Part shown: in pieces, positions 6,673-61,750 of the stretch
How the letters are laid out: every line of letters begins with the position of its first letter
Position numbering within the stretch: the stretch's first letter is position 1
Assembly: GCF_006345805.1 (NCBI RefSeq)
Contig: NC_042998.1
Span: 9,858,001-9,922,000, forward strand
DNA length: 64,000 nt
Reading direction: 5' to 3'
Origin: Octopus sinensis
Lineage: Eukaryota
Notes under the pieces: model-generated
What the model was told of the DNA's origin: nothing
Seen by the model: the letters and a program-made list of their open reading frames with translations, nothing else
The model's database searches: none
Translations under genes and position numbers: made by a program

Positions 6673-6757
6673 TCCAATAGAACAAGCATCGAGACGAAAC
6701 AACGAGTATGTGAACTATTGGTTTAAGCCTGTTGGTGGTTGAATATTTGCCACTCAG

Positions 6758-7304
6758 TAGAATTACCTTGTATGGTCGTGGGTATATATGTGGGATCTTT
6801 ACCCTTTGACGTACAAATTTTAAAAAATAATTTTTTGTAACTAAACACTTTCAAACTTCGGACACTGGTAGAATGTGTCATATAGAACATCTTTTACTCT
6901 TAGCATTTTTGAGAAAAACTTATATTTACGAAGTAATTTCACGTTAAAGTAGTCCTATTTCGGTAATTTCAACCAATCAATGACGTGTATTCAGCTGAAT
7001 AAAATTACTGCCGTTGTTTGTCATCAACAACTATCAGCGGTGTATTTTTCGTTTGTTACTGTTATTTATGACATCGTTCGTGCGTTTGTACTGGTTTTAG
7101 CTTTAAGGTTTTAGGGTTAGGGTTAGAGTTTTAGAATAGGGTTAGGGTTAGTGTTAGGTTTTCAGGGTCAGTCTATTTATTCGTTATATTTCACTTTCCT
7201 TCCGTTAAATGTAATGTTATTTCTAGTTGGAAACATCATTTCTGTGGCTATACTATCGGAGCTATTTTTAGCACTAGAGCTATCCACATAGTGGTAACTC
7301 TCTA
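6758..7304. mobile_element. Probable non-autonomous element with an internal degenerate (TTAGGG)n tract
   Basis: ttagggttagggttag...ttagggttag at about 7110-7170; weak terminal inverted similarity tagaattacc / ggtaactctcta. Confidence 0.4.
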
Positions 7305-7314
7305 ATAATTTATG

Positions 7315-7389
<75 letters not shown>

Positions 7390-7397
7390 ATATATAG

Positions 7398-7429
<32 letters not shown>

Positions 7430-8444
7430 AGTCTGATGTGAGAAATTTGTACCAGAAGTTTTCAAGTAGATTTTGTATTTGAAATTACTGGTATTTCTTT
7501 TGACTAACCGACAGAGCTTTAGTTAATAATCTTGTTTGGATTCGGAGTCATCACGCAGCTATGCCCATGAGTTTGGCTGAGAGGGATTCTATTTATCGTC
7601 GAGCTTTGCTTTTGTACATCAGTATACCATGACAATAATTGCGTGCTGAGCGACGACCCTTCATGATATAAGTATCAACCATTTAGGACTGGTCTATTGA
7701 GCAGGATTTTTGCTTCCGTACTGATGGAGTAGGGATGTACTTGCAGAATATATATTTTTCTATGTCTGACCAGATGGTGGTCTTGACCAGGCAAGTCAAA
7801 CTGTAGAGTCTCTATAGGCCACATTGCTCACATACATGTTGTAATAGAGGCAGCATATTTTTTACCCTTCAACATTAAGATTACTGTCAAATTTAATGCT
7901 TATTTATTTACCTTTTTCAATTAATCATCCATTATCTTGTAGCTTTGCTATTTCAATGGTATGATTGTTTACTTTTTGAATGACATTGTAGAGTAGGTGT
8001 GAGAAGCTAGATCTGGTCAGTCTGGACATAAAACAGATAGAATTTTGGGGCTGGATATGGTCTATGTTCAAATGCCGATCTGGCCATTGTAAAATAACTT
8101 TCAATATTCCAAACCTTCTCAATTTTAAATTGGGAAACAAATGAGACCAAGCGCTGAATTACTCGCGCATTCAGCCCACGGGCAGCTTTCACCGGCAGAA
8201 GTTGAAACAAGTGCAAAGTTATCAGATCTACAACCGAACAGAGGTAATAAATTAAAATTTTATCACATTAATTCTTTATTAAGTAAAAATGCTTTAAAAC
8301 CTTTTATTAACTCATCAATAATCCCATTTTTATTGATTAAATTATCATTAATCATTTTTATTATTAAAAATTTGGGGGCTTCCCAATTTTAAAACCTCCA
8401 GCTACGCCATTCGCTGGCCGTGTATTTGACAGACCCGGTCTTGA

Positions 8445-9060
8445 CTATAGGAAGGTTATAAACGGTTTACAAACACACTGATTAATTATTTGCATAAATT
8501 CTGTAATTAGTCTGTGCAAATTTGTGCTATCTTTAAATTTTCTCCGTATCGAGCTTAATTTTGCATTCAGTGAGATGGCCATGAGACTAGAAATTCTGAA
8601 AAACACTGACATTAAAATACGAGTAAATGGCATCGGAAACTTGTGGTATGCACATGACATAGTCCTGTTAACCACTAGAGAAGAAATAAAAAATTCTTCT
8701 CAGTAATGTTACGGAGACCTTTGTTAAGTTTGGAATATTGGTAAATGTCAAAAAGACCAAAGTTATGTGATCAGCTGCAAAACTACAATTTAAGTTACCT
8801 TCTTATCGAAAAGGTCAGGATCGAACAAGTGTTCTCCTTTATGTAGCTTGGTGCTGGACTATATGCAAGGAAATATTGCAGAGGCTAGCACATGCACTTG
8901 TAAGCTTTTGAAAGTTTAGAAAGATATATATGTGAGCACTAACACGAACGTACGCTTTCTCAAGTGTCTCATCTAATCAGTGGCGAAATATGAACCCTAA
9001 AAGTAGCTGGCGAAAAGAAGCTGAAGTTTAGAGGCACTGATGAATCTTTAGGGTATCATA
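8445..9060 (+). mobile_element. RTE-like LINE reverse-transcriptase relic
   Basis: VNGIGNLWYAHDIVLL (degenerate NLRYADD) and NVKKTKVM motifs. Confidence 0.7.
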
Positions 9061-9156
9061 TATCGAGCGAAGATCAATGAATATCATTGTAGATGAGACT
9101 GGCACGAAACCAGTACTTCAGGAAAGAGTTACTCAAAGGAAGCTTCACTGTTTTGA

Positions 9157-9356
9157 GCATGTCTAGAGAATGCACTGTGCTTGGAGGCACAGTGGAAGAA
9201 AGCCTCTCACAAGGAAGACATCTTTTCTGAAACCCTATCAAATGAAACACCTTTGCTGTGTTAATGACGGTGACAAGATCCGTCATTACTGAATGTTTCT
9301 GTAGGGTTAGTTATCTATCTCTGTGTGATATCTGCACTTATAGGGTGCTTCACACA
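9157..9356 (-). ncRNA. Candidate structured RNA (consecutive hairpins with H-box-like hinges)
   Basis: Stems 9322-9356, 9231-9308 (including perfect 9 bp TAATGACGG/CCGTCATTA) and 9159-9221; hinges AGATAA and AGAAAA; ACA at 9162-9160 on minus. Confidence 0.3.
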
Positions 9357-9479
9357 TTTCGCTACAATGTTGTAGAAAGGAATAAAACGGCAGGAACACG
9401 AATCGCTGAACAAATAACAATAAAGATTTATAATTTTCACAGAAGGAGATACTTCATCGCTGGTCATCGGTAGCGGGAA

Positions 9480-9760
9480 CGCCAGGGTTAGGAAAAACAG
9501 CAGAGTCGGATTAAATCACCATGGTTAGAACAGCCTTCACCGCCCGCCGAGTCGGGTTCGCCCTTCGCTCGGAGCCTTGTCGGGACATGCCTTAATTCAT
9601 CGACCGCCAAGAGCCAAGAGGTTTGGAATAGCGGGAAAAGCTAACTGCTCCTGATTACTGCGCATGCGCATCAGGGGACTTCCGGCAGGGATGTCCAACT
9701 TTGCACATGCGCAGATGGAATCCTAAAATGGCGTCTAAAACCTGGCGTCACTACATTTCC
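9480..9760 (-). promoter_or_regulatory. CpG-rich housekeeping-type promoter and first-exon region (locus A)
   Basis: TGCGCATGCGCA (NRF1) 9659-9670; ACTTCCGG (ETS) 9678-9685; TGCACATGCGCA 9702-9713; AAAATGGCG (YY1) 9725-9733; ACTACATTTCC (ZNF143-like) 9750-9760; TCT-like GCTTTTCCC on minus at about 9640. Confidence 0.75.
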
Positions 9761-10399
9761 TTTCTAATTATAGTCCATAGTGGTAGAATAAAATTATAAA
9801 TGATTTTATTTTACCCGTTGTATGGTTGTTGTTTATCTTTAGGTCAGATTTAACTGAGTAGGCCCATGATCAAAAGTATTCCAGCTGTGACCATCGAGGG
9901 ATACTGTTTCCAGACATAGTTTGTTTAGGATGACACTATCCAAAATACCACTCAATTATTAACATAGTAAATTGTACTTTTGGGAAGCAGCCAAGAAACA
10001 CGCCAATGTCTGTAAAAAGTGGAAAACAACTGTTGAGGCCCTATGCTCCACAAGGGACAAAAAGGATTAAGAAGAAGATATTGTACTTTTGGGGTGAAGT
10101 AATGGTAGGGATTTGGCTACTATTTTTGGCAGGTTGAGCGACCAACTAATGGCTCTCTCGGTGACACGGTCTGTGGTAGTGTTATACAGTTGTCGTACAT
10201 GTAAAAGATTTTATACTGCGACTTTTCTTCCTGGTCAAAAGCTTTGTATTATATATCACTCTGAAAGCCCCATCTACATCTGGAAAACAAAAAATTCCTC
10301 TTACAACATGGAGTTTAATAGGTAGGTTTAACTGGGTCAAACAGAATAAGAAACACTTGATTTAACAATTCATTAGAAGTCCTTGGTTCCACACCTTTT

Positions 10400-11396
10400 A
10401 AGGTCTAGCCACTGACCACAAGACAGTCAGTTCCAGCGACAACGCCAGCCAAACACCACCACACGTTGAAACTTACCAACTTCGTCCAACAGCATTACGA
10501 CAACCTGCTTCTTCGTCGCCACCACCATGTCCTTAACGTCGTCAACATCATTTCTATTCGTACACAGATCGGCAAGCAACTCACTCAGGTTCCAACACTT
10601 CTCTGTTTGTGAATTACTTCATGGATCAACAGCGAATATACAACGTGTATGAACTCCTGTATAAGTGACCCAGGCAGCAACATCACAACCACGACTTCAC
10701 GTATGACATGTACCTGTAACCGGCTCAGCATCATGGCCACGACTTCTTGATACGGTATTTCAACTACCGTGTACGAATGACTACGAACTGGTATTATTCG
10801 TCTTAAGGCGGCGAGCTGGCAGAAACGTTAGCACGTCGGGCGAAATGCTTAGCGGTATTTCGTCTGCCGTTACGTTGTGAGTTCAAATTCCGCCGAGGTC
10901 GACTTTACCTTTCATCCTTTCGGGGTCGATAAATTAAGTACTAGTTACGCACTGGGGTCGATGTAATCGACTTAATACCTATGTCTGTCCTTGTTTGTCC
11001 CTTCTATGTTTAGCCCCTTGTGGGTAATAAAGAAATGGGTATTATTCATCTTTCTTGTGTCTATGAACTTCTCACTTCGATGGCTGTAGACTCTTTCACT
11101 CTCTCCTTCTTCGTTGCCATCTTTAAATGTTCTTAACTCACGCCCATATATCTATGCCTGCACACACACACATACATTTAGTTCTCACGACGGCCTGTAT
11201 ATTATTCTGAATACATGACGCACACACATACACACATGTTATTACATCAATAAACATTCTCATAATCATTCTCACGCGGTTGTGCCTTTTTCCCTCTGGC
11301 ACTTTATTTGTTCCCTTCATTTCTATTTATTGTAAATGCTGTGTGGTGAGGTACGAAAGAGCCATTCTCCTCACCTCGCATCTCACGGTCGTTACA
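10400..11396 (+). mobile_element. Diverged relative of the 2965-4008 LTR, interrupted by a SINE
   Basis: Colinear similarity from ggtctagccactgacc to aagagccattctc...gttACA; 5' boundary not resolved. Confidence 0.6.
10806..11037 (+). mobile_element. SINE family 1 inserted into the LTR
   Basis: TSD GGTATTATTC(G/A)TCTT at 10790-10804 and 11038-11052. Confidence 0.9.
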
Positions 11397-16162: not shown

Positions 16163-16224
16163 ATGTTGCACTGTGGATCTCTAGCTCTCGGTCATCAGAG
16201 TCCTGCCAATAAGTTTCTACCAGG

Positions 16225-16560: not shown

Positions 16561-18545
16561 ACATAACACCATGAAACTGGAACCATCAGTTCTCAGAGAC
16601 GGCTCATTTTGGGGGATTAAGATGAAAGAGGCTCTTCTTAATATTACAGCTCTGAAAATGTCCAATCCAAAACGGAATTGAAAGTCTCACGGCGAAAATC
16701 GGCGAAGGGATCTTCTCAACTTGTTATCAGGCTTCTAACAATCTCACTGATCATCTCGCCTTCTAAATGCTGTGGCAAATTTCCTCACTGTTTGCCTTAT
16801 TTCAAACCAATTGGTTGTCCTTAATAAGTTCAGTGACCTGTTGCTTGATTTTATGTCGCGAATTCGTTGTCCAACTTGCTTCGTTCAAGATATTCAACGC
16901 GGCTGGATATTAATTAACTTTCTGCATACATAGCCGATGAAGAATATTGCCGCATCTTGCCAGGGGCTCGGTTGTCGTAGTAGAATTTATTTAAAGAAAA
17001 TGATGAGAAGGCAAAACCTTGCAAGCAAAAATGATATAATGACTCGCTCTCAGTTTGTCTTTCCAATGATTTGGTATCTTTACTAAAATGGAAGCATATA
17101 AGGCATAATATAATCCTTTCGTATTTTGGCACAAAGCCAGCAATTTTGAAGGATGGGAAAATCGATGATATCGACTCCAGTGCTTAAAATGTACTTATTT
17201 TACCAACATCGAAAGGATGAAAGGCAAAATCATCCTTGATGGAATTTTTCCGTAAAGACGGACGAAATGCCGCTAAGCATCTTGTTCGGCGTGCTAACGA
17301 TTCTACCTCTTGGCACAGCATTATACAACACGTGCTGAAAGATCCGATGCATATTGAATGTCCCCGCCAGCTCCACTAGCTACCTATCTTTCCCTTTCTG
17401 GACGTGCAAGAAATCCTATGTACAGTGGACTGAGCCATGAATAGGTAGAGTTGCAATAGAATGGCAAAATATTTTCCCCGCAGCTTATAACATTTTTTAT
17501 GCATTCAGTCACTACTGGGTCGAGTGGTTGGTCGTATTGACAGACATAGATTGCGGAAGGAACAACATCGCTTAAACACCAGTGATATTACTGCTCGTGA
17601 CCGAAAGACCATCATAGCTTAGAAAAATCAATTGAATGTCAACACAAATAAAATTAAACACTGAATAAGTATTGTAGAGTGATGCGATTCAGTATCAAGT
17701 TCAGAACTTACTCAAGATTCAGTAAATTTCTCAGAACTTACTCAAGATTCAGTAATTTTTTCAAAGTTCGAAAAATAGAGCAAAACAAGCAAGAGTAGTT
17801 TAATTTTTAAAATATTTGTTTTATTCCTAATTAATGCGAAAGAGACTAATTTAGACAATTCTCGACCTACTTTTTGATTACAGACATCATATTGTTCTGA
17901 ATATCGTGATGTTCGTAAGTTGCATTTCGGAACTTCTCTATTACTGTACAAACGTATTCCTTTCATAAAATAATCAGTAGTCGTTCCACACAGGGGCTGC
18001 AGTGATATGGATTTGGGATCTATGGTCGATAGCCAAAGCACCGTTTGATTATCAGCAAACTCTCAATCGCAAGTGTCTGTCTTAGTGAATGCCTGCTCAT
18101 GTACTGTGTTCCAGTTTGTCCAGAAAATTTTAACAGCAAGGACAATATACCGCATTTTCTGGCATGCAAGCCCCTGTACGTTGTTTATAAAACTTTACTT
18201 TGAAACCCTGATGAATTGAACAATAATTTTTGTGAGAACTTTCTGAATTTATCTCTTTGATTGTTGCTAATGTCTTCCAGGTGAAGATCTTCAATCTACC
18301 GATTAGCAATTATCTTAGAAGCATCAACGTCCGCATTGAAGTGCATCTTTTCAAATGAAAGGTCTTCCCACTCTTTAGCATAATGCAAATTGGCTACAAG
18401 CTCTTCGGTGTCTGTCACAAAGTTATCATGGTGTCCAAATCTCTTGAACTGGAACCCGATGGATCCAATCTTATCAAAATTTTCAAATTCTACCGAAGAT
18501 AACATTTTCAGACCAAAAAATTATTGTCATATATCTACAAAATAG

Positions 18546-21134: not shown

Positions 21135-21249
21135 TTTATCCTGTCCCCCCTTCGACTTTAGTTCATGCAGTTGAAAAACCGCATTATTTATGGGATGGCC
21201 CAAAACATGCACATACATCACACACGCACACAGAGACTCACATACGCAT

Positions 21250-22191: not shown

Positions 22192-22233
<42 letters not shown>

Positions 22234-23606
22234 CCTATCTATCTATACACGCACACACACCCATGCAGTTCTCTTCCTTCTTTCTTTCTTTCCTTCTTTT
22301 TTCTTTATCTTTCTATCTATCTATCTTTCCTTCTTTCTTTCTCTTTCTTCCTTTCTCTCTTTCTTTCTTTATCTCTCTCTCTTTCTCTTTCTTCCTTTCT
22401 CTCTTTCTTCTTTCTCTCTCTCTCTTTCTTTCTTTCATTCTCTCTCTCTCTCTTACTCTTTCTCTCTTCATTTCTTTATTTCTCTTTCTTTCTTCCGTTC
22501 TTTCTTTCTTTCTTTTTCTTCCTTCCTTCCTTTCTTTCTTTCTCTCTCTTCCTTCCTTTCTTTCTGTCATTCTCTCTCTCTCTCTTTCTCTTTCCCTTTC
22601 TCTCTGTGTCATGACAATTTAGCAGACGACAGGGGCAGATAATTGTGCTGTCCAGCCTTCCTCCAGTCTTCCCCCTCTTGCCTCCTTCCTCCCTCTCCTC
22701 CTCCTTCCTTTACTAATATAAATAAAGCCAGTCGCTTGCCTCGTCGTCACTCAGTCCGTCTTTTGTCCTGCTTGCTATCGAGTCGTTCTTTCTCTTCTTA
22801 GATCCCGCATTGCTGCTGCTGCTGCTGCTCTTAGTCTCTCTCTCTCTCTCTCTCTCTCATCACTTTTGTTATTTTCTTCGCCTCATCCAAAACAGACGCG
22901 AACCCGGCATCGAATACTTCATTAGGTTTGTTAAACACTCTTCCTCATTTAAAAGCTGTTGATCCAAATATATCCATTAATTACAAAACACACACACATA
23001 CATACATTCATACACACACACACTCACACACACACATACACACATACATACACACACACACACATACACACACATATACATACACACATACACACACACA
23101 CATATACACATACATACATATACACACACATACACACACACATATATACACACACATACATACATACACACACACATATATTATTCTAAGCGTGCAAAAC
23201 AAATGCAGAAACGTAATCGAACCGATTTATTGTCTTCCAAGCAATTCTCCTCCATCTCATTCTTTTGTATTTCATATCATATTGTTAACATTTTTTCCTA
23301 ATTTCTTTAAGATCCACACCAAATATCTGTCTGTCTGTCTGTCTTCCTTTTCTCCCTCCCTTCCTCTCTCTCTGTGTCTATCTATCTGTCTATCTGTATA
23401 TCTATCTGTCTATCTATCTATCTATCTGTCTGTCTATCTGTCTGTCTATCTATCTATCTGTCTGTCTATCTGTCTGTGTGTGTGTCTATCTATCGGTCTA
23501 TCTGTCTGTCTATCTATCTGTCTATCTATCGGTCTATCTGTCTGTCTATCTGTCTGTCTGTCTATCTATCGGTCTATCTATCTGTCTATCTATCTATCTA
23601 TCTCTG

Positions 23607-40460: not shown

Positions 40461-42319
40461 GCATGCATTTATTTTGGTAATTGCTTACTCCTGTTTTTGA
40501 AATTCAAATAGAATATATAACATGGGACACACCCTACAAAATTTGCATGTGACTGAACTAATTTCCGTAGATATATCTCATGTTCTGGTTAAACTGTATC
40601 ATATGTTCTCTGTGTAGATGAAGAATCAGTCATAAGACTTCTACATGAGCCAATGTGAGGTGTCAGCAGTTGCTCGACTTGCCAGAAATAGCAATCAAAA
40701 GTGCTTCAAATCTCACTCAATTTGTTTAAATAAAGAGACACACATAGAAGAGTATATCCCAGAATATAATACAGCGTCTGAATAAAATGTGATGCTTTTG
40801 GCCGGAATGCATTTGGTAATAAGCCTTCTGGATCTGGGCTAATCTGGGGTTAAATACAACAGCCTCCATCCACAATATCTACTTACCCCCAACTTCTCTA
40901 CCTGATATATATGGTTAAGGTAATATAACTTTACACTTTCGTCTAGACTGCATACACTGTTAGATATACTTACTTATTGCACTGACTTGTTTAGTTTGCC
41001 TAAACATCTGTAACCACTGTGTGCACTGCTTACTAGATATTTAGATTCAACAGCATCTAGAATGATAGGAAGCCCTTATGAAAATGATAATACAAATCTA
41101 TTTGTTATTTAGCACTAGTGGCATATGATTTACATTATTTTTCACTTTGAATATGCATTTTTAAAAACTTTTGAATAATTTTTTCCTTCTAGCCCAGACT
41201 GCTTGTTATGCTGCATTTAGTAGCTTGTAGAGTTTATTATTCATTATACTATATCTATGTTTCTTATTTACTGCACTTCCTTTATTTACATAATAAATGT
41301 ATTAAAAATTTTCTAAGCAGTGAAAAATACACACATCCAGACCCTGTGTTTATTAGAGAAGTTTAGCCTGATTCTTCCTTATCCTTTCTTTAAATAGAGA
41401 TTCTTTGTTAAAGCCCAAGCAGTGGAGGGTCAATGCAAGGTCAGTGAGTCATTATCACCACACAACACCACAATCTGCCACTCCACATTGCCAACTGCTA
41501 TTTTTGTTTTTGCTTTTATTCCGAAAGCAAAGTATGATCTGAATATAATTTGCACTTAGAAATGCTGAAGTTTCCGTTGCAGCAGAAGGAAATTTGATAA
41601 TAGAGGGAGATGAGAAAAAAAATCCTCATATTTTTTGTAAACATTTTTAATCAGTTGAAAAACAAAAATGGGATTGTTTTAAATGCTGTTTTTATTTTTG
41701 GATAATAACAATTATTATTAAAAATTAATATCAAATTTCATTGGACCATTTTCTGGATTATCACTTAAATATTTTATCTGATGTCCCTGAGAAGTTTACT
41801 GTACCATTTCATACAGAAATAGTTTTTTGACCTTTTATTTAAGTAAGCATCTCTAGTGTTGATATAACAGCTCAAGTGCTACTAAATTATGAGATAATAT
41901 CAAAATGTTATTGTTCATGACATGCCTTGTATCAGTTTTAGAACATTGTCTTAGCTTAAATATTCCCAACATATTTTACTTTTAACATAAATAACTTTTT
42001 ATCTTCTTGACTGTTTGAATGTAATTTATCTCAGCAGTATTGATGTCAACCAGATAAATTAATTTTACTGTTTTAATTTATATACTTACTTCTTTTACAC
42101 TGATATGTAATTATAAATCATATTAAAATTTTCTTTTGTTTAATCACTCTATTTAAAATAGTTTTCATATTTAGATACTAGTTTGAAGTGGACTGTTTTA
42201 TATAATATAAATGTTATGCAAACTGTTAGAGTTGATTTTATATGCCAATAATTCACATGAAAAAAAAGTGACTGCTGTGACTGAGTGAATTATTCTTCTT
42301 TTCAGCTAATTAGTTTTAA

Positions 42320-47599: not shown

Positions 47600-47637
47600 A
47601 TTCTTCTGATAAATTCTTCTGTTTTGTCTTTTCAGCC
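47600..47637 (+). other. Splice acceptor 2 nt upstream of the FAAH2 ATG, implying an upstream 5' UTR exon
   Basis: Polypyrimidine tract ttcttctgttttgtcttttcag with AG at 47634-47635, followed by ccATG. Confidence 0.75.
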
Positions 47638-47820
47638 ATGGAATTCTCTAGGTTACTAATATTTGTGCTTGTCAAGCTGTATCGGTGGACATTGCTTCCT
47701 ATTTTTAACATAATTTTTAATGTGCTGAATTCTGCGCCTCCTGTTTCTGTGCCACCAGTTACTAATCCATTGCTCCTCAAAAGTGCCACTGAATTAAGTA
47801 AGATGATTCGTAACAAAGAA
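47638..47820 (+). CDS. FAAH2: FAAH2 coding exon 1 (MEFSRLLIFVLVKLYRWTLLPIFNIIFNVLNSAPPVSVPPVTNPLLLKSATELSKMIRNKE)
   Basis: ATG in cagCCATGG context; hydrophobic N-terminus followed by PVTNPLLLKSATELSKMIR, matching human FAAH2 PVTEPLLLLSGMQLAKLIR; donor GAA|gtaagt at 47820/47821, phase 0. Confidence 0.93.
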
Positions 47821-48806: not shown

Positions 48807-49026
48807 ATAAAGTGCACTGAAGTTTTAGAAGCTTTTATTGAAAGATCAAAATTAGTGAATCCTACAATAAATTCAATTTGCTCTAATTGCTATGAAGTGG
48901 CCCGTCAACAAGCACTTGAAGTAAACGAAATATTAGAACAAGATGACATTCCAGATGAATATTCAGAAAAAAATGCACCCTTTCTTGGAGTACCTCTTTC
49001 TGTTAAGGAAGCTTTTGCTTTGACAG
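48807..49026 (+). CDS. FAAH2: FAAH2 coding exon 2 (IKCTEVLEAFIERSKLVNP...PFLGVPLSVKEAFALTG), with catalytic Lys128
   Basis: Acceptor tttcag|ATA, donor ACAG|gtaaaa; 220 nt, phase 0 to 1; PFLGVPLSVKEAF amidase motif. Confidence 0.97.
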
Positions 49027-52080: not shown

Positions 52081-52831
52081 ATGGGCAGTGGGTGGTGTAG
52101 GCATAAGTGAGTAGATGGAAAATTTGCTTTGCAACCATGTGATACATTGTGGAACTTGGGCAACATTCTTTTACTCTCACTCCTTGAAAGCCAATGCCTT
52201 ATAAAGGAATCTAATTGATGAAAACTGCAGACAGCCTGTTGTATACATGTGTGTGTACATGTCAAAATGTGTTTCAGTGTTTATATATTCTGTGCTTGTC
52301 ACTGTTTGAGTGAAGCAGTGCTCTCATTGACATTGTGACTGATTGCTCTGCACTTCTGAAAGCCTGTCGAATAAAAATATTCCTTACTTGAAAGATATGT
52401 AAAGGGTGGCAACAAGGTAAAAAACACCTGGGTGTAAAATCAACAAATCTCTGTTCAAACCCATGCTATCATGGGCAAAAAAATACAAACAGAAAAAATG
52501 TTTAATAAATGAATATATTATCTGATCATTCATTTTATATCTACTTTTCTATTCTGGTATGAATTAGACAATGACTTACTAAGACACTATTTTATGGCTG
52601 GATCCTGTCCCCAACTCTCACCTGTGCCCTGGCCCCTCTGGCACCTGTGCTGGTGGCACGTAAAAAGCACCCACTACACTCACGGAGTGGTTGGCATTAG
52701 GAAGGGCATCCAGCTATAGAAACACTGCCAGATGAGACTGGAGCCTGGTGCAGCCTCCTGGCTTCCCAGACTCCGGTTGAACCGTCCAACCCATGCTAGC
52801 ATGGAAAAACGGACAGTATCAATACATTATA

Positions 52832-53110
52832 GCGTCGCCACTTTAGAAATTTTCAGCACGCATGTGCAGAGTTGGATTCTTCCAGGAGGCCTGTCGGAAG
52901 TTCCCTCATGCGCATGCGCAGAAACGAGCAGCAGCAAAATTTCTCTCGTTCGGTCTCTCAAACGCTGACAACCAAACAGGATGGACGTGTTTTAGTAGCT
53001 CTCTCAGGCCACCACCCCATGGCGTTGCTACGCTATGCTTGAACGAACAGGATTTGGCTCACTCCACTTGACTACTGTGACGAGCTCCTAGGCTGCCAAT
53101 TCGCTCTGAA
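52832..53110 (+). promoter_or_regulatory. CpG-rich promoter paralogous to locus A, nested in FAAH2 intron 2 (locus B)
   Basis: CGCCACTTTAG 52836-52846; CGCATGTGCA 52859-52868; CGGAAGT 52895-52901; TGCGCATGCGCA 52909-52920; TCT-like TTTCTCTC 52940-52947. Confidence 0.7.
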
Positions 53111-53207
53111 GAAAAATATATATATATTGCGAATCCAGAAATAAAATATTTATGCTGTTGAATTTAATCGGAAGTCTTGTCTCTTTCCTTCGATTAATAT
53201 TTTAATG

Positions 53208-53318
53208 TAAAGGATGAGAGCTGCACCCATCCAGTGTTACAGACCTTTCATCCTGTCACAACATTGTCCGTTTAAATTAGCTGTTAAAGTGTTAACTGCT
53301 GATAAACTGGAAACACTG
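53208..53318 (+). ncRNA. Candidate H/ACA-like small RNA (hairpin, H box, hairpin, ACA)
   Basis: Stem AGGATGAGAG 53211-53220 / CTTTCATCCT 53245-53254; ANANNA box ACAACA 53258-53263; second hairpin 53267-53311; ACA at 53313-53315. Folded by eye; no target found. Confidence 0.4.
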
Positions 53319-53677
53319 ATGATGGATTGGGACCTGTGACATATGCAGTGCATCATGAAGAGTTATACAAGCGAAAGTTATATTTGACAGATAATTATGA
53401 TAAATTGAATGTGATGGTACTCCAGCATGGCTAGAACCACAATATTTAAATGAATTGAAAGCTTGTCGGATATTTTTTTTCAGGTCATGTCAAGGATGGG
53501 GAGTTGGTAGAAAAAGCTAAGAACCACTTTTAGTATATGTTGTTGCATGTTCTCTTTTTTCGGTATATCTCCAACGAGATTGACTTTACATTTCATTTCT
53601 TCAGAACCAGTAAAACAAATAGCAATAATGCAATTAAACATTTTAAATCAAGTTAATGAGCCTAGTTTCTGAAACCT

Positions 53678-54066
53678 TTACTCTTTTACTTGTTTCAGTC
53701 ATTTGACTGCGGCCATGCTGGAGCACCGCCTTTAATCGAACAACTCGACCCCGGGATTTATTCTTTTTTATTTGTAAGCCCAGTACTTATTCTTTTGGTC
53801 TCTTTTGCCGAACCGCTAAGTAACGGGGACATAAACACACCAGCATCGGTTGTCAAGCAATGCTAGGGGGACAAACACAGATTCGCAAACACACACATGC
53901 ATACACATATATACATATATACGACGGGCTTCTTTCAGTTTCCGTCTACCAAATCCACCCGAGGCTATAGTAGAAGACAGTTGCCCAAGGTGCCACACAG
54001 TGGGACTGAACCTGGAACCGTGTGGTTGGTAAACAAGCTACTTACCACACAGCCACTCCTGCGCCT
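53678..54066 (-). mobile_element. SINE family 2
   Basis: Family consensus match with a central deletion. Confidence 0.85.
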
Positions 54067-55341
54067 TTAGTACAATATTCTTTTCTACTCTAGGCACAAG
54101 GCCCAAAATTTTTGGGGAGAAGGGGGGGGGGCAGTTGATTAGATTGACACCAGTATGTAACTGGTACTTAATTTATTGACTCCAAATGGGTGAATGACAA
54201 AGTCGACCTTGGTGGAATTTGAACTCAAAATGTAAAGATAGATGAAGTACCACTAAGCATTTCGCCTGGCATGCTAACATTTCTGGCAGCTTGCCGCCTT
54301 CCTTTAGTACAATATTATCTCTGCTACTCTCATCATTCATTCATTAATTCCTTTGACTTCATTTGAAGCACATGGCATCAACAAGAGATCTCCATCTGAC
54401 TTGATTTTTGGCAATGGATTTCAGTTGTTCCCAGGTATAGCTACCTGTCCTGTATATAATCATAATTTTTGTGGTATTTCTGGGAAGGAAAACATAACCT
54501 AATTAACACCTTTCTGGATTTATGAGAAATTTCTATGAGATTAGTGTAGTTTATACCAGAATGACAAGTTTTAGATTTAACTGACACCTGGTTTAATACC
54601 ATCACCACTGCTACTACCACCACTACTATCAGCACTACCTGGTCCTTTGGCTGTGTTTATCAGAGTTCACTGTGTTGTAAGCATTAAGACCAGGTATTTA
54701 ACATGAAGATAACTCTCTATATTGCTACATGGCTTTCTATTTTAGTAAACCATGAGCTGTAGTTTCTTATTTCTTTACTGCCCACAAGGGGCTACTCACA
54801 GAGGGGACAAATGATTAAGTTGATTATATCAACTCCAGTGCGTAACTGGTACTTATTCAATCAACCTCAAAAGGATGAAAGGCAAAGTTGACCTCGGCGG
54901 AATTTGAACTCAGAACGTAGCAGCAGACGAAATACCACTAAGCATTTCACCCGGCATGCTAACGTTTCTGCCAGCTCGCTGCTTTAAAGTCACCCATGAG
55001 TTGTACTTTCTCTTTTCCTCATGTGTGAGACCCTGCAAAATACCTTGAGTATTGCTCTTCCTCTATAAAATAACAAAAGTCAGTCATTAGTAAAATATGT
55101 TGACATATGGATAAATAAGAATTTATTTCCTAGTTGTTTAAGACCTTTTTTTAGCTTATGTTACACATCATGTAGATAGGCGAAAATACAATTTTATTGA
55201 ATTGATTTTATTGAGAATGAAGGATGGCGGACACCAGAGAAAACGTTTGGAAGAAGCAACCAAAGTAAAAGTAGAAAGCATGATGTATATTTTCCTATTA
55301 TTTAAGAAATGATTACACAGTGTTTAATTATTCTTTTGTAG

Positions 55342-55551
55342 GTATGCCAAACACTTCTGGTTTAGTAGTACGTAAGAATACTATTGCTACAAAAGATGCA
55401 GAAGTGATTGCTAATTTACGCAAGTCTGGTGTCATTCCATACGTAGTGACCAACATAAGTGAGCTCTGCATGTGGTATGAATCAGCTAACAATATATATG
55501 GAAGATCCTGTAATCCTTACGATAATAGGCGCATCGCTGGAGGCAGCTCAG
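55342..55551 (+). CDS. FAAH2: FAAH2 coding exon 3 (GMPNTSGLVVRKN...TNISELCMWYESANNIYGRSCNPYDNRRIAGGSSG), with Ser203
   Basis: Acceptor tttgtag|GT, donor TCAG|gtaaat; 210 nt, phase 1-1; close to human TNCSELCMWYESSNKIYGRSNNPYD...GGSSG. Confidence 0.98.
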
Positions 55552-57420: not shown

Positions 57421-57825
57421 TATCCTGTACTTAGTGGAGGCACATGGCCTAGTGGTTAGAGCAGCGGACTCGCAGTCGAGGGATCACGGGTTCGAATCTC
57501 ATACCGGGCAATGTATGTGTTTATGAGCGAAAACACCTAAACTCCACGTGGCTCCGGCAGAAGGTAATGGTGAACTTCTGCTGACTCTTTCGCCACAACT
57601 TTCTCTCACTCTTTCCTCCTGCATCTTGCTGCTCACCTGTGACGGACCGGCGTCCCGTCCAGGCTGCGAACCTATACGCCAAGGAAACCGGGAAACCGGC
57701 CCTTGTGAGCCAGGCATGGCTCGAGAAGGAACAGTATCCTGTACTTAAACATCACAGCCACTGTGCTACATTATATGTTATATTTCAAAATTGACTCTTC
57801 TGTTTTTTCATTCCCTATTGTTTAG

Positions 57826-57945
57826 GTGGTGAGGGTTGTCTGATTGGCTCTGGGGCTTCAATTATTGGAGTCGGCTCGGATATCGGCGGCAGTATTCGTA
57901 TACCATCGTTTTTTAATGGAATTTTTGGTCATAAGCCATCTACAG
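57826..57945 (+). CDS. FAAH2: FAAH2 coding exon 4 ([41 protein letters not shown]), with nucleophile Ser227
   Basis: Acceptor tgtttag|GT, donor ACAG|gtaaat; 120 nt, phase 1-1; amidase signature GSDIGGSIR. Confidence 0.98.
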
Positions 57946-58083
57946 GTAAATAGACTCTGCTTTATCATCAGTTGTTTCTCTGTGTGTTCCTGTGTGTGTG
58001 TAGCTATTGAAATATTAATTGAAAAATTGAGAATTCTTCTTTTTACAAAATCTTTGTGCCTAAAGTAGAAAAGATTTATTATT

Positions 58084-59260
58084 AGGCGCAGGAGTGGCTG
58101 TGTGGTAAGTAGCTTGCTAACCAACCACATGGTTTTGGGTTCAGTCCCACTGCGTGGCATCTTGGGCAAGTGTCTTCTGCTATAGCCTCGGGCCGACCAA
58201 TGCCTTGTGAGTGGATTTGGTAGATGGAAACTGAAAGAAGCCTGTCGTATATATGTATATATATATATGTGTGTGTATCTGTGTTTGTCCCCCTAGCATT
58301 ACTTGACAACCGATGCTGGTGTGTTTACGTCCCCGTCACTTAGCGGTTCAGCAAAAAAGACCGATAGAATAAGTGCTGGGCTTACAAAGAATAAGTTCCG
58401 GGGTCGATTTGCTCGACTAAAGGCGTGCTCCAGCATGGTCGCAGTCAAATGACTGAAACGAGTAAAAGAGTAACTAAACTGTTTGTGACACCCCAATATG
58501 GCTGCAGTCCAAAAACTAAAACAAGTAAAAAAAAAAAAAAGGATAAAAGATTAACTTGACAGGTCATTAGAAAGTAACTGGATATATATCTGGGATCCCT
58601 CACATTATAAAAACTCTGGTTTCTGTTAAAAAAGTGACTGCATTGGTTGTTTTTTTTTTCTTTCTGAAAATATTCTGTTGGAATGCATCATAATTTATAA
58701 CAGAATTCAGTGGGCAAATTGGTTTTCTGTCATGAAATGCCATTCCAAAGCAAAGTTTTCAGGAATACAACTCTTCTGTAATGTGTTTGTGAGTGTGGGG
58801 TTTTGTTGTAACTGGTTAAAAGTCTTTCCTGGCATGTTTTTAGGCAGACATACACAGTTAGGTGCAGGAGTGGCTGTGTGGTAAGTAGCTTGATTACCAA
58901 CCACATGGTTCCGGGTTCAGTCCCACTGCGTGGCACCTTGGGCAAGTGTCTTCTACTATAGCCTCGGGCCGACCAAAGTCTTGTGAGTGGATTTGGTAGA
59001 CGGAAACTGAAAGAAGCCTGTCGTATATATGTATATATATATATATGCGTGTGTGTGTTTGTGTGTCTGTGTTTGTCCCCCTAGCATTGCTTGACAACCG
59101 ATGCTGGTGTGTTTATGTCCCCGTTACTAAGCGGTTCGGCAAAAAGAGACCGATAGAATAAGTACTGGGCTTACAAAGAATAAGTCCCGGGGTCAAGTTG
59201 CTCGATTAAAGGCGGTGCTCCAGCATGGCCACAGTCAAATGACTGAAACAAGTAAAGAGA
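58084..59260 (+). mobile_element. Two SINE family 2 copies (58084-58472, 58860-59260)
   Basis: Family consensus match. Confidence 0.85.
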
Positions 59261-59445
59261 AAAAAAGAGTTAACTATTAAGTAATGGGTTCAATTCACTC
59301 CATTTTGGTCCAGTAGCTGGTCTGACCTATGCAAGCATTGAAAAATGTACATTAAAGCAATGATGAGGATGGCTAATTCATTTCCCCTTTTTATTTTTTC
59401 CCAATGCATTCTATATTTATTTATGCTACAAAATTCTGTTTCTAG

Positions 59446-59600
59446 GAATCGTCTCAAATGACGGCCAATTTCCTAATGCAAGTGGCCAGCAGAAAGAACT
59501 TTTGTGTGTAGGACCCATGTGTCGATATGCAGAGGATCTCAAACCAATGTTACGCATCATGGCTGGAGAAAATGCCAAGAAACTCAAACTTGATGAACCT
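59446..59600 (+). CDS. FAAH2: FAAH2 coding exon 5 (GIVSNDGQFPNASGQQKELLCVGPMCRYAEDLKPMLRIMAGENAKKLKLDEP)
   Basis: Acceptor gtttctag|GA, donor CCT|gtaatt; 155 nt, phase 1 to 0; GPMCRYAEDL identical to human FAAH2. Confidence 0.97.
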
Positions 59601-61651
59601 GTAATTTATTTTTCATTGACTTTTTTTATAAATCGTGCATCTATTATTTTTAATTATGTTTGTATATAAATTTGTTATAACAATTAGAAAACAAGAATTG
59701 CCCTAATTAGAAATAGTAAGCTTTCTTGCTGATAGCATTTTTGAAAAATCATTCTGAAATTTTTTCGAATGAAAAGATTTTTTCAAAACAATGATAATTT
59801 TTTCTAAATGTATTATTTATTTTATCAAGCATTAGTGTGATAGAATGAGGGTGCATGGCTCAGTGGCAAGGGCATTGGGCTCACAGTCATGAGATAGCGA
59901 GTTCAATTCCCGAACTGAGCTGTGTGTTGTGTTCTTGAGCAAGACACTTTATTTTACATTGCTGCAGTTCATTCAGCTGTAGAAATGAGTTGTGATGCCA
60001 CTGGTGCCAAGCTCCCATGACCTTTGCCTTTCCCTTGGATAACACCAGTGGCATGGAGGGGGAGGCTAGTACACATGGGCGATTGCTGGTCTTCTATAAA
60101 CAACCTTACCTGTGCCTTGGAGGTAATTTTCTAAGGACAATCCCATGGTTGTTATTATTGAAGGGGATTTTTACCCTAGTGTGATAGAGTAACTTGCTTA
60201 ACCTCTTATAAATAGAAATATCTTACAATAATTTCTCAACCCTTCTAACCTCAGATTTTTGGAAAATGAACTTATGATGTTCATGCATTTCCCATGAACA
60301 TTAGTGGAGTTAGTAAAATAGTTAAGACTGCAAGTTGAACCTGGGGCACAATTTTGGTTCACCCGGAGCTTACTCATGGGGTTAACACACAGTTCCTATA
60401 GGAACCTCTACATCAGAGGCTGTCAGGTTTTTTTTTCTTGTTTTTTTTTTTACTTTACAGTACACAGTAGACTGAATAAAAAATTACTGGAGAACTTTGT
60501 ATAGAAAGCTAAAAGGACTGTTTTAAAGTTTAAAATTTAGAAATATTACAGAAAATCTATTGCTAAACTTGTTTCACTAAACCTTTAGTGTTCAGATTAC
60601 TTTGTCACGTGTAATCCTTCCTTATTCACATTGTTTTGAATTAATCTCTTAGCTTTGACATTTTGATGATGTGGTTGTTTATGTTTAGTATGTGACAGGC
60701 TGGATCTGATCAGTTTGAGCATAAAACAAGTAAACTATTTGGGCCAGATGTGGCTGGTTTAAATGGTAAACGGTTAATCATGCTTGTGTGAAACATAAGC
60801 TTGATGCTCTTGGGTGATTTACTTTCAATCTTAAGAATCATGTGCAATAAACAGACTCTTTATTTCTTGTTCAATGCACTGAATAGTTTATCATCATCAT
60901 CATCATCGTTTAATGTCTGCTTTCCATGCTGGCATGAGTTGGACGATTTGACTGAGGTCTGGTGAACCAGATGGCTGCACCAGACTCCAATCTGATCTGG
61001 CAGAGTTTCTACAGCTGGATGCCTTTCCTAACATCAACCACTCCAATAGTGTAGTGGGTGCTTTTACATGCCACCGGCACGAGGGCCAGTCAGGCGGTAC
61101 TTGCAACATCCACGCTCGAATGGTGCTTTTTATGTGCCACCTGCACAGGAGCCAGCCCAGCGACACTGGCAACGACCTTGCTTGAATGTTTTTTTCACGT
61201 GCCACCAACACAAGTGCCAGTAAGGCGACGCAAGTAATGATCACGCTTGAATGGTGCTTTTTGTATTTCTTTTTATATTTTAGCCTTTAATGTTGGTCAG
61301 TGAAAAAAAACCCATCTCATGTTTGTATGATATTGAAAACTGAATTTTCTGATCCACTACCCTAATATCTTAATGTTACTTTCAACTGTATTGGCACAAG
61401 CCTCAATTTTTTGGTGATGGTGGGTATTTGACTATATTGACCACCGCACTTGACCGGGATTCCATTTGATTGACCTATAGCTGTTTGTAAAGCAGGGACA
61501 ACCTTCGCAGATTGTCAGAATGAAAAGGGCTACAGTTGCAAGATATTTTGTCAAACTAGTGATTTTGCCAATTATTTGCAGTAAAAAATCATATTCATTC
61601 AGGTTTACAGATTCTGTTTTGTTTACGCATTTAATATATTTCTTTTTTTAG

Positions 61652-61750
61652 GTTGACTTGGAAAAATTGAAAATCTATTATATGGATAATGATGAAGGAG
61701 GTTTATTTTCAAGCTCTGTCCAACCTGAAATGAAAAAAGCAGTTCACAAA
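61652..61750 (+). CDS. FAAH2: FAAH2 coding exon 6 (VDLEKLKIYYMDNDEGGLFSSSVQPEMKKAVHK); gene continues beyond the window
   Basis: Acceptor tttttttag|GTT, donor AAA|gtaaga; 99 nt, phase 0-0; aligns to human VHLKDLKFYWMEHDGG. Confidence 0.93.

What the first reader, a model, noticed from the sequence alone, without database searches (positions are those of the whole stretch)
9545..9760. Two paralogous promoter-plus-structured-RNA modules 43 kb apart (locus A here, locus B at 52832-53318)
Seen directly: three blocks are shared in the same order, A on minus and B on plus. CGCCATTTTAGGA/CGCCACTTTAGAA (11/13; 9721-9733 vs 52836-52848). CGCATGTGCAAAGTTGGA/CGCATGTGCAGAGTTGGA (17/18; 9694-9711 vs 52859-52876). 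A 35-nt ETS+NRF1 block, 31/35 (9655-9689 vs 52890-52924). Spacers differ in length and sequence while motifs and CpGs are kept, which looks like selection rather than neutral repeat decay. Both continue into a pyrimidine TCT/5'TOP-like start about 20 nt after NRF1, a CCATGG opening only a 3- or 7-codon ORF, patchy further similarity (tggcgtt..cgcta; tctg..gaaaa.tata; acaacattgt), and a hairpin with a GCAC/GTGY upper stem, 7-nt loop and a 7-bp lower stem that changes sequence but keeps pairing (TGTGTGA/TCACACA vs AGGATGA/TCATCCT). Established: YY1, ETS/GABP, NRF1 and TCT starts typify ribosomal-protein and snoRNA-host promoters in vertebrates. Inference: a duplicated non-coding RNA gene family. 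Locus A also has a GC-rich stem at 9545-9585.
Basis: partly seen in the sequence, partly recalled or inferred. Interest (0 to 1): 0.82.

Follow-up and report, generated by a model that had tools for sequence, protein, structure and literature searches.

The report
Duplicated promoter cassette in octopus FAAH2
A ~100-bp cluster of NRF1-, ETS- and YY1-type binding sites occurs twice in the Octopus sinensis FAAH2 gene, once in the CpG-rich region at the gene's far-upstream 5' end and once inverted inside an intron; it is best read as an ordinary housekeeping-type promoter cassette plus a stray copy, not as a family of structured-RNA genes.

Summary
The core observation is real. A (9645-9733, minus) and B (52836-52934, plus) share three motif blocks in the same order (11/13, 17/18, 31/35). 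It is the only non-repeat similarity between the two ends of the window (E about 1e-10 to 1e-12).

The rest of the finding does not hold:
- the downstream similarity is marginal;
- the two hairpins are not positional homologues;
- the whole putative RNAs fold no better than shuffles;
- the short ATG ORF at B is lost in O. vulgaris;
- Rfam finds nothing.

Context changes the reading. The window is Octopus sinensis chromosome CM016860.1 and carries FAAH2 on the plus strand. A lies in the only unique CpG-rich patch of the 5' region, about 560 nt upstream of the donor of the most distal FAAH2 5' exon in the O. vulgaris gene model. B lies in the intron between coding exons 2 and 3, inside a SINE-riddled 2.27-kb segment that O. 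bimaculoides lacks.

Best reading: an NRF1/ETS/YY1 TATA-less, probably bidirectional, promoter cassette of FAAH2, plus a diverged inverted intronic copy that O. bimaculoides does without. A dispersed mobile-promoter family is not excluded, because no whole-genome search was possible. Interest is low to moderate.

The parts
9625..9745 (-). It contains a YY1-type site, an NRF1-like site, an ETS site and a perfect NRF1 palindrome.
9725..9733 (+). YY1-type core AAAATGGCG. It reads in the sense direction on the plus (FAAH2) strand.
   Evidence: The motif assignment comes from the published consensus and was not tested.
9702..9713 (.). NRF1-like 12-mer TGCGCATGTGCA, one mismatch from the palindrome.
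9678..9685 (-). ETS/GABP-type core CCGGAAGT.
9659..9670 (.). Perfect NRF1 palindrome TGCGCATGCGCA.
9301..9800 (.). Unique (non-repeat) CpG-enriched patch around A. It holds 17-22 CpG per 300 nt, with o/e 0.99-1.16 against 0.62 window-wide.
10294..10322 (+). 3' end of the most distal FAAH2 5' exon in the O. vulgaris model CAI9718786.1. The donor is AATAG|GTAGGT. The exon start, and hence the transcription start site (TSS), is unknown.
17843..17914 (+). FAAH2 5'UTR exon with canonical AG/GTAAGT sites. It carries an in-frame TGA in O. sinensis.
22896..22925 (+). FAAH2 5'UTR exon with canonical splice sites.
41398..41439 (+). 5' exon used by the O. sinensis RefSeq isoform X1 (ATGCAAG|GTCAGT). An acceptor-like site lies upstream of it.
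47636..47820 (+). FAAH2 ATG exon. The ATG is at 47638 and the exon is preceded by the acceptor ttttcag.
48807..49026 (+). FAAH2 coding exon 2.
52420..54682 (.). Segment of 2.27 kb present in O. sinensis and O. vulgaris but absent in O. bimaculoides. It is flanked by AGGTA (52415-52419 and 54683-54687) and contains locus B and three SINE copies.
52825..52945 (+). Locus B cassette. It has a degenerate YY1-like site (GCCACTTT), block 2, an ETS-like TCGGAAGT (52894-52901) and a perfect NRF1 palindrome (52909-52920).
52640..52815 (.). SINE copy that ends about 20 nt from the YY1-like end of the B cassette.
55342..55551 (+). FAAH2 coding exon 3. Locus B lies in the intron 49027-55341.
57825..61750 (+). 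FAAH2 coding exons 4-6 (57825-57945, 59445-59599, 61652-61750). The last exon lies 181 nt beyond the window end.
9318..9357 (-). It is a local hairpin only and is not supported as a conserved element.
53211..53255 (+). It is a local hairpin only and is not a positional homologue of hairpin A.

Best explanation
Locus A is the transcription-factor-binding core of a TATA-less, CpG-enriched, housekeeping-type promoter region at the distal 5' end of the Octopus sinensis FAAH2 (fatty-acid amide hydrolase 2) gene. Within about 90 bp it carries two NRF1-type sites (one perfect palindrome, one with a single mismatch), an ETS/GABP-type CCGGAAGT and a YY1-type AAAATGGCG.

Such cassettes recruit ubiquitous activators and typically fire in both directions. 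The plus-strand product would be the FAAH2 pre-mRNA: first exon ending at 10322, then small 5'UTR exons, then the ATG exon at 47.6 kb. Any minus-strand product would be a divergent non-coding by-product, not a structured RNA gene.

Locus B is a second, much diverged copy of only this ~100-bp cassette. It is inverted relative to A and lies in the intron between coding exons 2 and 3 of the same gene, in a SINE-rich segment that O. bimaculoides lacks. B is either a decaying relic or at most a weak intragenic promoter or enhancer. Its YY1-type core is already degenerate.

**Shown:**
- the sequence relationship between A and B;
- the gene context;
- the absence of B in O. bimaculoides.

**Inferred:**
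- which factors bind;
- that A is the active FAAH2 promoter;
- the direction of firing.
For: **The module is real and unique**
- The A/B similarity is strongly significant and is the only non-repeat match between the window ends.
- Perfect NRF1 10-mers occur only at A and B in 64 kb. ETS and YY1 cores co-occur there.
- A is the strongest unique CpG-enriched patch in the window.

**Gene context**
- The window is 100% identical to O. sinensis CM016860.1 over the 32.6 kb (31433-64000) that overlaps the fetched locus.
- FAAH2 exons were mapped by tblastn and by splice sites.
- The ATG exon starts with an acceptor, so at least one upstream exon must exist.
- The O. vulgaris model (574 aa) starts at the position equivalent to window 10294. 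It has canonical splice sites at 10322, 17843-17914 and 22896-22925.
- That annotation was built from Iso-Seq and RNA-seq with PASA and TransDecoder (PMC10700109).
- The other 5' exons (41.4 kb here, about 40.9 kb in O. bimaculoides) have acceptor-like sites, so they are probably internal. This points to a far-upstream first exon.

**No coding or known RNA product**
- There is no coding exon or Pfam domain within 6600-10400 or 52800-53700 on either strand.
- No other gene is called within 10 kb upstream in O. vulgaris.

**Published support**
- NRF-1, YY1 and GABP sites are over-represented in divergent promoters, and GABP drives bidirectional transcription (PMC2077898).

**B is dispensable in at least one species**
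- B is absent at the orthologous intron site in O. bimaculoides, with a clean junction.
- No module was found in the O. bimaculoides or Argonauta FAAH2 loci +/-10 kb.
Against: - No transcription-start, chromatin or methylation data could be consulted. The TSS and the strand of firing at A are therefore inferred.
- The tool reports CDS ranges only, so the start of the distal exon is unknown.
- A polypyrimidine-AG at 9843 could be an acceptor. That would place the TSS elsewhere.
- The CpG-rich sequence lies mainly on the minus-strand side of the cassette (9301-9640).
- The orthologue of A in O. bimaculoides could not be fetched, so conservation of A beyond the sinensis/vulgaris pair is untested.
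- High identity inside the motif blocks (59/66), with unalignable flanks, suggests that B too has been under constraint. That sits uneasily with calling B a relic.
- Genome-wide copy number is unknown.
Confidence: 0.55

Rival explanations
1. Mobile or dispersed promoter family. The cassette would be the promoter-bearing part of an old transposon (an LTR or a LINE 5'UTR) or of another dispersed repeat. A and B would be two independent, differently truncated copies, and B would have arrived with, or as part of, the 2.27-kb insertion.
For: - B lies in a segment absent from O. bimaculoides that is bounded by a 5-bp direct repeat, AGGTA. This could be a target-site duplication.
- A and B are far more diverged (74% in the cassette, flanks unalignable) than O. 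sinensis and O. bimaculoides introns (85-93%). So if B was inserted after that split, it cannot have been copied from A and needs a third source copy.
- The window is 37% repeats.
Against: - There are only two copies in the 64-kb window. There are none in 39.7 kb of O. bimaculoides or 26.9 kb of Argonauta.
- The unique parts of the B segment are single-copy in all sequence held.
- There is no TE protein domain next to either copy.
- The 2.27-kb segment has no terminal inverted or long terminal repeats and no poly-A end. It is a mosaic of unique DNA and three SINEs.
- The AGGTA repeat fits a microhomology-mediated deletion in O. bimaculoides equally well.
Confidence: 0.17
2. Both copies are active and kept by selection. 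B would work as an intragenic alternative or antisense promoter, or as an enhancer of FAAH2: a promoter echo inside its own gene.
For: - Motif blocks are 59/66 identical while the spacers and flanks have decayed.
- CpGs inside the motifs are retained. CpG o/e at B is 0.87 against 0.62 for the window.
- The distance from the YY1-like site to NRF1 differs by 10 nt between A and B, which is one helical turn.
- B is 100% identical between O. sinensis and O. vulgaris across the cassette.
Against: - B is absent from O. bimaculoides.
- Its YY1 core is degenerate (GCCACTTT), and block 2 has two mismatches to NRF1.
- Identity between the two sister species is uninformative, because the whole B region is about 99% identical outside one indel.
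- A sense transcript from B spliced to exon 3 would lack the exon-2 part of the amidase domain.
- No gene is called at B.
Confidence: 0.2
3. A and B would be paralogous non-coding RNA genes, each with a promoter cassette, a TCT start and a conserved structured RNA. They would be snoRNA-host-like or members of a small-RNA family.
For: - Local hairpins exist at similar distances (about 290-300 nt) from the NRF1 site, with z = -2.4 and -3.0.
- Downstream similarity is weak but just exceeds all 194 real-sequence controls: 19 against a maximum of 18.
Against: - Rfam finds nothing at gathering scores, and only noise at E <= 10. There are no tRNAs.
- The whole regions fold no better than shuffles, with z = +1.1 and -1.2. 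The GC stem gives z = +1.0.
- The hairpins are not colinear with the only significant downstream alignment.
- A 7-bp stem with a 10-40-nt loop is expected about 0.8 times per 400 nt by chance (own arithmetic).
- In O. vulgaris the A hairpin has 3 substitutions, and the B hairpin has a C inserted in the upper stem.
- The B short-ORF ATG is GTG in O. vulgaris.
- B is missing in O. bimaculoides.
Confidence: 0.08
4. Independent origin. Two unrelated promoters would have converged on the same NRF1, ETS and YY1 sites.
For: These motifs are common partners in TATA-less promoters (PMC2077898).
Against: - Similarity extends beyond the motif cores: AGTTGGA after block 2, CCTG before ETS, and 5/7 matches in the ETS-NRF1 spacer.
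- The order is identical.
- E is about 1e-12, with a score 27 sd above shuffles.
Confidence: 0.03

Closest known systems
TATA-less, CpG-rich bidirectional (divergent) promoters carrying NRF-1, GABP/ETS and YY1 sites (vertebrate housekeeping genes; Collins et al. 2007, PMC2077898)
   Same: - The same motif set sits within about 90 bp.
- CpG is enriched relative to the surroundings.
- There is no TATA box.
- An annotated exon lies within about 600 nt on one side, and CpG-rich sequence lies on the other.
   Different: - This is a mollusc, and factor binding was not tested.
- No partner gene is known on the minus strand.
- A second diverged copy of the cassette lies inside the same gene.
Intragenic alternative promoters and orphan CpG islands
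   Same: B is a CpG-retaining cluster of promoter-type sites inside an intron, far from the annotated 5' end.
   Different: - B is a sequence relative of the gene's own distal cassette.
- It is missing in a congener.
- No transcript or exon is known to start there.
Transposon-borne promoters (LTRs; LINE-1 5'UTR with its YY1 site)
   Same: - A short promoter module is found at more than one place, with unrelated flanks.
- One copy lies in a lineage-specific segment with a 5-bp flanking repeat.
   Different: - There are only two copies in about 130 kb of octopod sequence examined.
- There are no adjacent TE coding remnants and no terminal repeats.
TCT / 5'TOP promoters of ribosomal-protein and snoRNA-host genes
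   Same: A pyrimidine run lies about 18 nt after the NRF1 site in both copies. YY1 and GABP sites are classical in ribosomal-protein promoters (from memory).
   Different: - A has G at -1 and A at -2 (AGCTTTTCC). B lacks a clean YYCTTTYY.
- No ribosomal-protein gene, snoRNA or host-gene exon lies downstream.
- The only gene here is FAAH2, on the other strand at A.
External-promoter small-RNA gene families (snRNA-type PSE/DSE, Pol III type 3)
   Different: - There is no PSE- or TATA-like element at fixed distance.
- There is no Rfam RNA and no conserved RNA body.

Membership tests
NRF1/ETS/YY1 TATA-less (bidirectional) promoter | Clustered consensus sites for NRF1 (YGCGCAYGCGCR), ETS class I (CCGGAAGT) and YY1 (AANATGGCG) within about 100 bp | tested here: met
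   A has all three, plus a second NRF1-like site. B has NRF1 perfect, ETS as TCGGAAGT and a degenerate YY1. The consensus strings are taken from the literature and from memory.
NRF1/ETS/YY1 TATA-less (bidirectional) promoter | CpG enrichment relative to the bulk genome | tested here: met
   CpG o/e is 0.99-1.16 at 9301-9800 and 0.87 at 52751-53050, against 0.62 for the window. Both patches are non-repeat.
NRF1/ETS/YY1 TATA-less (bidirectional) promoter | A transcription start of a gene within about 1 kb | tested here: inconclusive
   For A, the distal FAAH2 exon of the O. vulgaris model ends at 10322, 590 nt from the cassette. Only the CDS range is given, so the TSS is unknown. For B, no exon or gene starts nearby.
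NRF1/ETS/YY1 TATA-less (bidirectional) promoter | Divergent transcription from both strands; factor occupancy | not testable with these tools
   No CAGE, ATAC, ChIP or RNA-seq is available. Four ORF look-ups meant to fish for transcript contigs found nothing.
   Rfam gives 0 hits at gathering and only noise at E <= 10. Folding z is +1.1 (A, 341 nt) and -1.2 (B, 381 nt).
   The hairpins are on opposite sides of the colinear ACAACATTGT match, so they are not positional homologues. The sister species shows a stem-disrupting insertion in B and 3 substitutions in A. With 2 paralogues and 2 orthologues there is no statistical covariation test.
   B is absent at the orthologous site in O. bimaculoides. 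No module is present in Argonauta FAAH2 +/-10 kb. The A orthologue in O. bimaculoides could not be fetched.
TCT / 5'TOP core promoter | YYC(+1)TTTYY initiator, and a translation-related or snoRNA-host gene downstream | tested here: not met
   A reads AGCTTTTCC, with purines at -2 and -1. B reads AAATTTCTCTC. There is no coding exon, Pfam domain or snoRNA downstream.
Transposable-element promoter (LTR / LINE 5'UTR) | Many dispersed copies with extended homology | tested here: inconclusive
   There are only 2 copies in 64 kb, none in L001 or L002, and homology is limited to about 100 nt. A whole-genome search was not possible. Scans of metagenome and viral collections found 0.
Transposable-element promoter (LTR / LINE 5'UTR) | Terminal repeats or a target-site duplication, and adjacent TE coding sequence | tested here: inconclusive
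   A 5-bp AGGTA repeat flanks the 2.27-kb segment holding B. There are no LTRs, TIRs or poly-A and no TE domains nearby.

The most novel reading that the evidence does not exclude
The ~100-bp NRF1-NRF1-like-ETS-YY1 cassette would be a unit that octopus genomes copy and keep under selection. Either it is a promoter echo: the FAAH2 distal promoter duplicated, inverted, into its own intron, where it acts as an antisense or alternative promoter or a looping partner that tunes FAAH2 output in the O. vulgaris/sinensis lineage. Or it is the signature of a still undescribed low-copy mobile-promoter element.
Probability: 0.12. Interest if true: 0.5.

Novelty: new member of a known kind. Interest (0 to 1): 0.22.

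Why it matters
If the reading is right, the finding mainly gives a usable annotation. It locates the likely distal promoter of octopus FAAH2, an endocannabinoid-degrading amidase. It shows that FAAH2 has a roughly 38-kb 5'UTR region with small 5' exons whose usage differs between species. It also offers a compact, testable 90-bp cassette for promoter work in cephalopods, where few promoters are defined.

The intronic copy is a small natural experiment. The cassette is present in O. sinensis and O. vulgaris and absent in O. bimaculoides, which allows a test of whether an intragenic promoter copy affects host-gene expression.

It does not reveal a new RNA family.

Tried and rejected
- **Rfam.** I searched the whole window at gathering scores and both loci at E <= 10. 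Nothing credible appeared. The tRNA scan found 0.
- **Pfam.** I scanned all ORF pieces of 30 aa or more on both strands of 6600-10400 and 52800-53700. No domain was found, so no hidden coding exon or TE protein lies beside either cassette. Two earlier calls (10, 11) failed because of stop codons.
- **FAAH2 paralogue near A.** tblastn with FAAH2 proteins found no amidase exon left of 47.6 kb. An inverted duplication of the gene itself is therefore rejected.
- **Extended duplication.** BLAST of 1-22000 against 42001-64000 found only SINE matches and the 100-nt cassette.
- **Public collections.** Exact-pattern scans with the 27-nt ETS+NRF1 block returned 0 hits in metagenome contigs and 0 in viral contigs. 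This was expected, because neither collection holds cephalopod genomes.
- **Fishing for orthologues, paralogues or transcripts through spurious ORFs.** The last protein search used 12 ORFs spanning both cassettes and found no hit at E <= 10. Four exact look-ups of ORFs over A and B found nothing on record.
- **Logan contigs.** L005-L008, from the FAAH2 protein cluster, turned out to be genomic contigs of a third octopus. They cover only the first two coding exons and the last exon, not A or B.
- **Helitron, LTR or LINE reading of the 2.27-kb segment.** The termini (AAAAAC...AAGACC) fit none of these, and no terminal repeats were found.
- **A FAAH2 promoter shared with Argonauta or within 10 kb upstream in O. 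bimaculoides.** No NRF1, ETS and YY1 cluster is present in either.
Full report
**1. The observation**

Reading both loci and aligning them confirms the three shared blocks at exactly the stated coordinates:
- CGCCATTTTAGGA / CGCCACTTTAGAA, 11/13;
- CGCATGTGCAAAGTTGGA / CGCATGTGCAGAGTTGGA, 17/18;
- a 35-nt block holding CCGGAAGT / TCGGAAGT and the palindrome TGCGCATGCGCA, 31/35.

The order is the same, with A on the minus strand and B on the plus strand. The spacers differ: 9 vs 10 nt and 4 vs 13 nt.

The similarity is far beyond chance:
- BLAST gives 74% identity over 100 columns, with E = 5e-12 against the whole window.
- A local alignment scores 42, against 7.7 +/- 1.2 for shuffles.
- It is the only non-repeat match between the left and right 22 kb. 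Every other hit there is a SINE.
- There is no third copy in the window.
- The perfect NRF1 10-mer occurs nowhere else in 64 kb.

So the modules are related by descent. Convergence on common motifs does not explain the matching non-motif bases: AGTTGGA, CCTG, and 5/7 positions of the ETS-NRF1 spacer.

**2. The parts of the finding that do not survive**

Beyond the cassette the similarity is marginal. The best local score is 19, against a maximum of 18 among 194 same-sized unique segments of the window. The global score is below the shuffle mean.

In that best alignment the shared ACAACATTGT is colinear. This places the A hairpin after it and the B hairpin before it, so the two hairpins are not homologous positions. 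"A stem that changes sequence but keeps pairing" then describes any two unrelated hairpins. By my arithmetic, a 7-bp perfect stem with a 10-40-nt loop is expected about 0.8 times per 400 nt.

Folding results:

| Region | z-score |
|---|---|
| Hand-picked 55-nt window, hairpin A | -2.4 |
| Hand-picked 60-nt window, hairpin B | -3.0 |
| Whole 341-nt region downstream of A | +1.1 |
| Whole 381-nt region downstream of B | -1.2 |
| GC-rich stem near 9545-9585 | +1.0 |

Rfam has no match at gathering scores and only noise at E <= 10. There are no tRNAs.

Against O. vulgaris, which is 97% identical overall:
- the A hairpin carries three substitutions;
- the B hairpin has an inserted C in its upper stem;
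- the B CCATGG start is CCGTGG.

The TCT-like runs fit the initiator consensus only loosely.

**3. Where the window comes from and what gene is there**

Stop-to-stop ORFs on the plus strand downstream of B encode amidase-signature peptides. A protein search identifies FAAH2. With a longer query, the best hits are:
- Octopus bimaculoides FAAH2, 96%;
- Argonauta hians, 87%;
- Acanthosepion, 63%.

The 90% cluster also holds the O. sinensis and O. vulgaris proteins. The O. sinensis locus L004 is 100% identical to window 31433-64000. The window is therefore O. sinensis CM016860.1, about 9,858,001-9,922,000. O. vulgaris (L003) is 95-98% identical across the whole window.

The coding exons are:

| Exon | Coordinates |
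|---|---|
| 1 (ATG at 47638) | 47638-47820 |
| 2 | 48807-49026 |
| 3 | 55342-55551 |
| 4 | 57825-57945 |
| 5 | 59445-59599 |
| 6 | 61652-61750 |

The last exon lies just beyond the window end.

Two consequences follow:
- The ATG exon begins with a splice acceptor, so the promoter must lie upstream.

**4. Locus A is at the distal 5' end of FAAH2**

The O. vulgaris model CAI9718786.1 (574 aa) starts at the position equivalent to window 10294. It runs through small exons at 10294-10322, 17843-17914 and 22896-22925, all with canonical splice sites, before the ATG exon.

In O. sinensis these exons lack the ATG and contain a TGA. They are therefore 5'UTR, and the 44-residue extension is an ORF-calling artefact.

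That annotation was built from Iso-Seq and RNA-seq with PASA, TransDecoder and EVM (PMC10700109). I take this as indirect evidence that the exons are transcribed.

The other 5' exons have acceptor-like sites and so look internal:
- 41398-41439, used by O. sinensis RefSeq isoform X1;
- about 40.9 kb in O. bimaculoides, whose donor is lost in O. sinensis.

The cassette at A (9645-9733) is 560-590 nt upstream of the donor at 10322. It lies in the strongest unique CpG-enriched patch of the window, with o/e about 1.0-1.16 against 0.62. Its YY1-type core reads AAAATGGCG on the FAAH2 strand.

No Pfam domain or coding exon lies within 6600-10400 on either strand. No other gene is called in the 10 kb upstream in O. 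vulgaris.

NRF-1, YY1 and GABP sites are the motifs over-represented in divergent promoters, and GABP drives bidirectional firing (PMC2077898).

My inference is that A is the core of the distal FAAH2 promoter and probably fires both ways. What is not shown is the TSS position and the strand. The CpG-rich DNA lies mostly on the minus-strand side, and a possible acceptor at 9843 leaves room for other arrangements.

**5. Locus B is lineage-variable**

Against O. bimaculoides (L001), synteny runs through the intron but skips window 52420-54682. The junction is clean, and the extra segment is bounded by AGGTA on both sides.

The segment is a mosaic:
- 220 nt of unique DNA;
- a SINE ending 20 nt from the cassette;
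- the 857-nt unique B region;
- two more SINEs, one nested with a perfect 16-nt target duplication;
- 387 nt of unique DNA.

It has no terminal repeats and no poly-A. Its unique parts are single-copy in everything I hold. It is present in O. vulgaris, about 99% identical around the cassette.

A microhomology-mediated deletion in O. bimaculoides is the simpler reading. An insertion in the vulgaris/sinensis lineage is not excluded.

The polarity matters. A and B are much more diverged (74% in the cassette, flanks unalignable) than O. sinensis and O. bimaculoides introns (85-93%). A post-split insertion could therefore not have been copied from A, and would imply a third source copy, that is, a family.

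No cassette occurs in the O. bimaculoides or Argonauta FAAH2 loci +/-10 kb. The O. bimaculoides orthologue of A lies outside the DNA I could fetch.

**6. How it most likely works, and the rivals**

*Best explanation (0.55).* This is a TATA-less NRF1/ETS/YY1 promoter cassette serving FAAH2 at A, plus a diverged inverted copy of the cassette alone in an intron (B). O. bimaculoides does without B.

*B active and selected (0.20).* The contrast between 59/66 identity inside the motif blocks and decayed spacers and flanks suggests some constraint on B. So does the 10-nt (one helical turn) difference in YY1-to-NRF1 distance. I therefore keep "B is an active intragenic promoter or enhancer" as a live variant. 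The block boundaries were chosen after seeing the data, however, and B's YY1 core and second NRF1-like site are degenerate.

*Mobile-promoter family (0.17).* This stays open because no whole-genome search was possible. The low copy number in about 130 kb of octopod sequence, and the lack of TE features, argue against a high-copy element.

*Convergence (0.03).* It is contradicted by the statistics.

**7. Verdict**

This is a real duplicated cis-regulatory cassette of a familiar type, in an informative gene context, with no evidence for a new RNA family. It is a new member of a known kind, of low to moderate interest. The decisive data all exist publicly but were out of reach here: genome-wide copy number, stranded long-read transcription starts, chromatin and methylation state, and outgroup octopods to settle the polarity of the indel.

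Noticed in passing
window 10294-10322, 17843-17914, 22896-22925 (L003 10001-10027, 20082-20153, about 25240-25270): The O. vulgaris FAAH2 model CAI9718786.1 has a 44-aa N-terminal extension read through three tiny 5' exons. In O. sinensis the same exons have ATT instead of ATG and an in-frame TGA. They are therefore 5'UTR, and the extension is probably an ORF-calling artefact.
   Followed up: yes
window 40900-40925 vs L001 9990-10015: The 5' exon used by O. bimaculoides isoform X1 (ATGG|GTAAGG) has lost its donor in O. sinensis (ATGG|TTAAGG). O. sinensis X1 uses another small exon instead, at 41398-41439. FAAH2 5'UTR exon usage therefore differs between species.
   Followed up: partly
window 54766-54987: A SINE copy flanked by an imperfect ~19-nt target-site duplication (ACCATGAGCTGTAGTTTCT / ACCCATGAGTTGTACTTTCT). 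It is absent at the orthologous site in O. bimaculoides.
   Followed up: partly
window 54064-54316: A SINE (54080-54300) nested next to another SINE (53660-54069). It is bounded by a perfect 16-nt direct repeat, CCTTTAGTACAATATT, which looks like a young insertion.
   Followed up: partly
window 19448-20300, minus strand: A decayed mariner-type transposase, with Pfam PF01359 hits on two ORF pieces and an HTH piece.
   Followed up: yes
window 15751-16200: A unique CpG-rich patch whose ORFs include a C2H2 zinc finger (PF00096). It is possibly the tail of a retroelement and is not a promoter candidate for FAAH2.
   Followed up: partly
window 21000-24300, 33900-34400, 38600-39300, 40100-40500, 56000-57000: Long, compositionally skewed microsatellite and low-complexity arrays (CT/GA, TATC, CATA and (CATC)n-like). 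They account for most of the long ORFs in the mechanical list.
   Followed up: no
window about 53421 vs L003 about 55750: A 34-nt indel between O. sinensis and O. vulgaris, about 500 nt from the B cassette. Otherwise the B region is about 99% identical between the two species, higher than the 95-97% typical of the window.
   Followed up: no
window 9760-9850: A stretch just on the FAAH2 side of the A cassette is much more diverged between O. sinensis and O. vulgaris (about 20 substitutions plus a 6-nt indel in 90 nt) than the cassette and the CpG-rich side (about 3%).
   Followed up: no
L005-L008 (Logan SRR11869384, SRR11869385, SRR11869391): Short genomic contigs of a third octopus species, 83-91% identical to O. 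sinensis and O. bimaculoides. They cover the first two coding exons and the last exon of FAAH2. Such runs could supply an outgroup for the intron indel if they were searched by DNA.
   Followed up: partly
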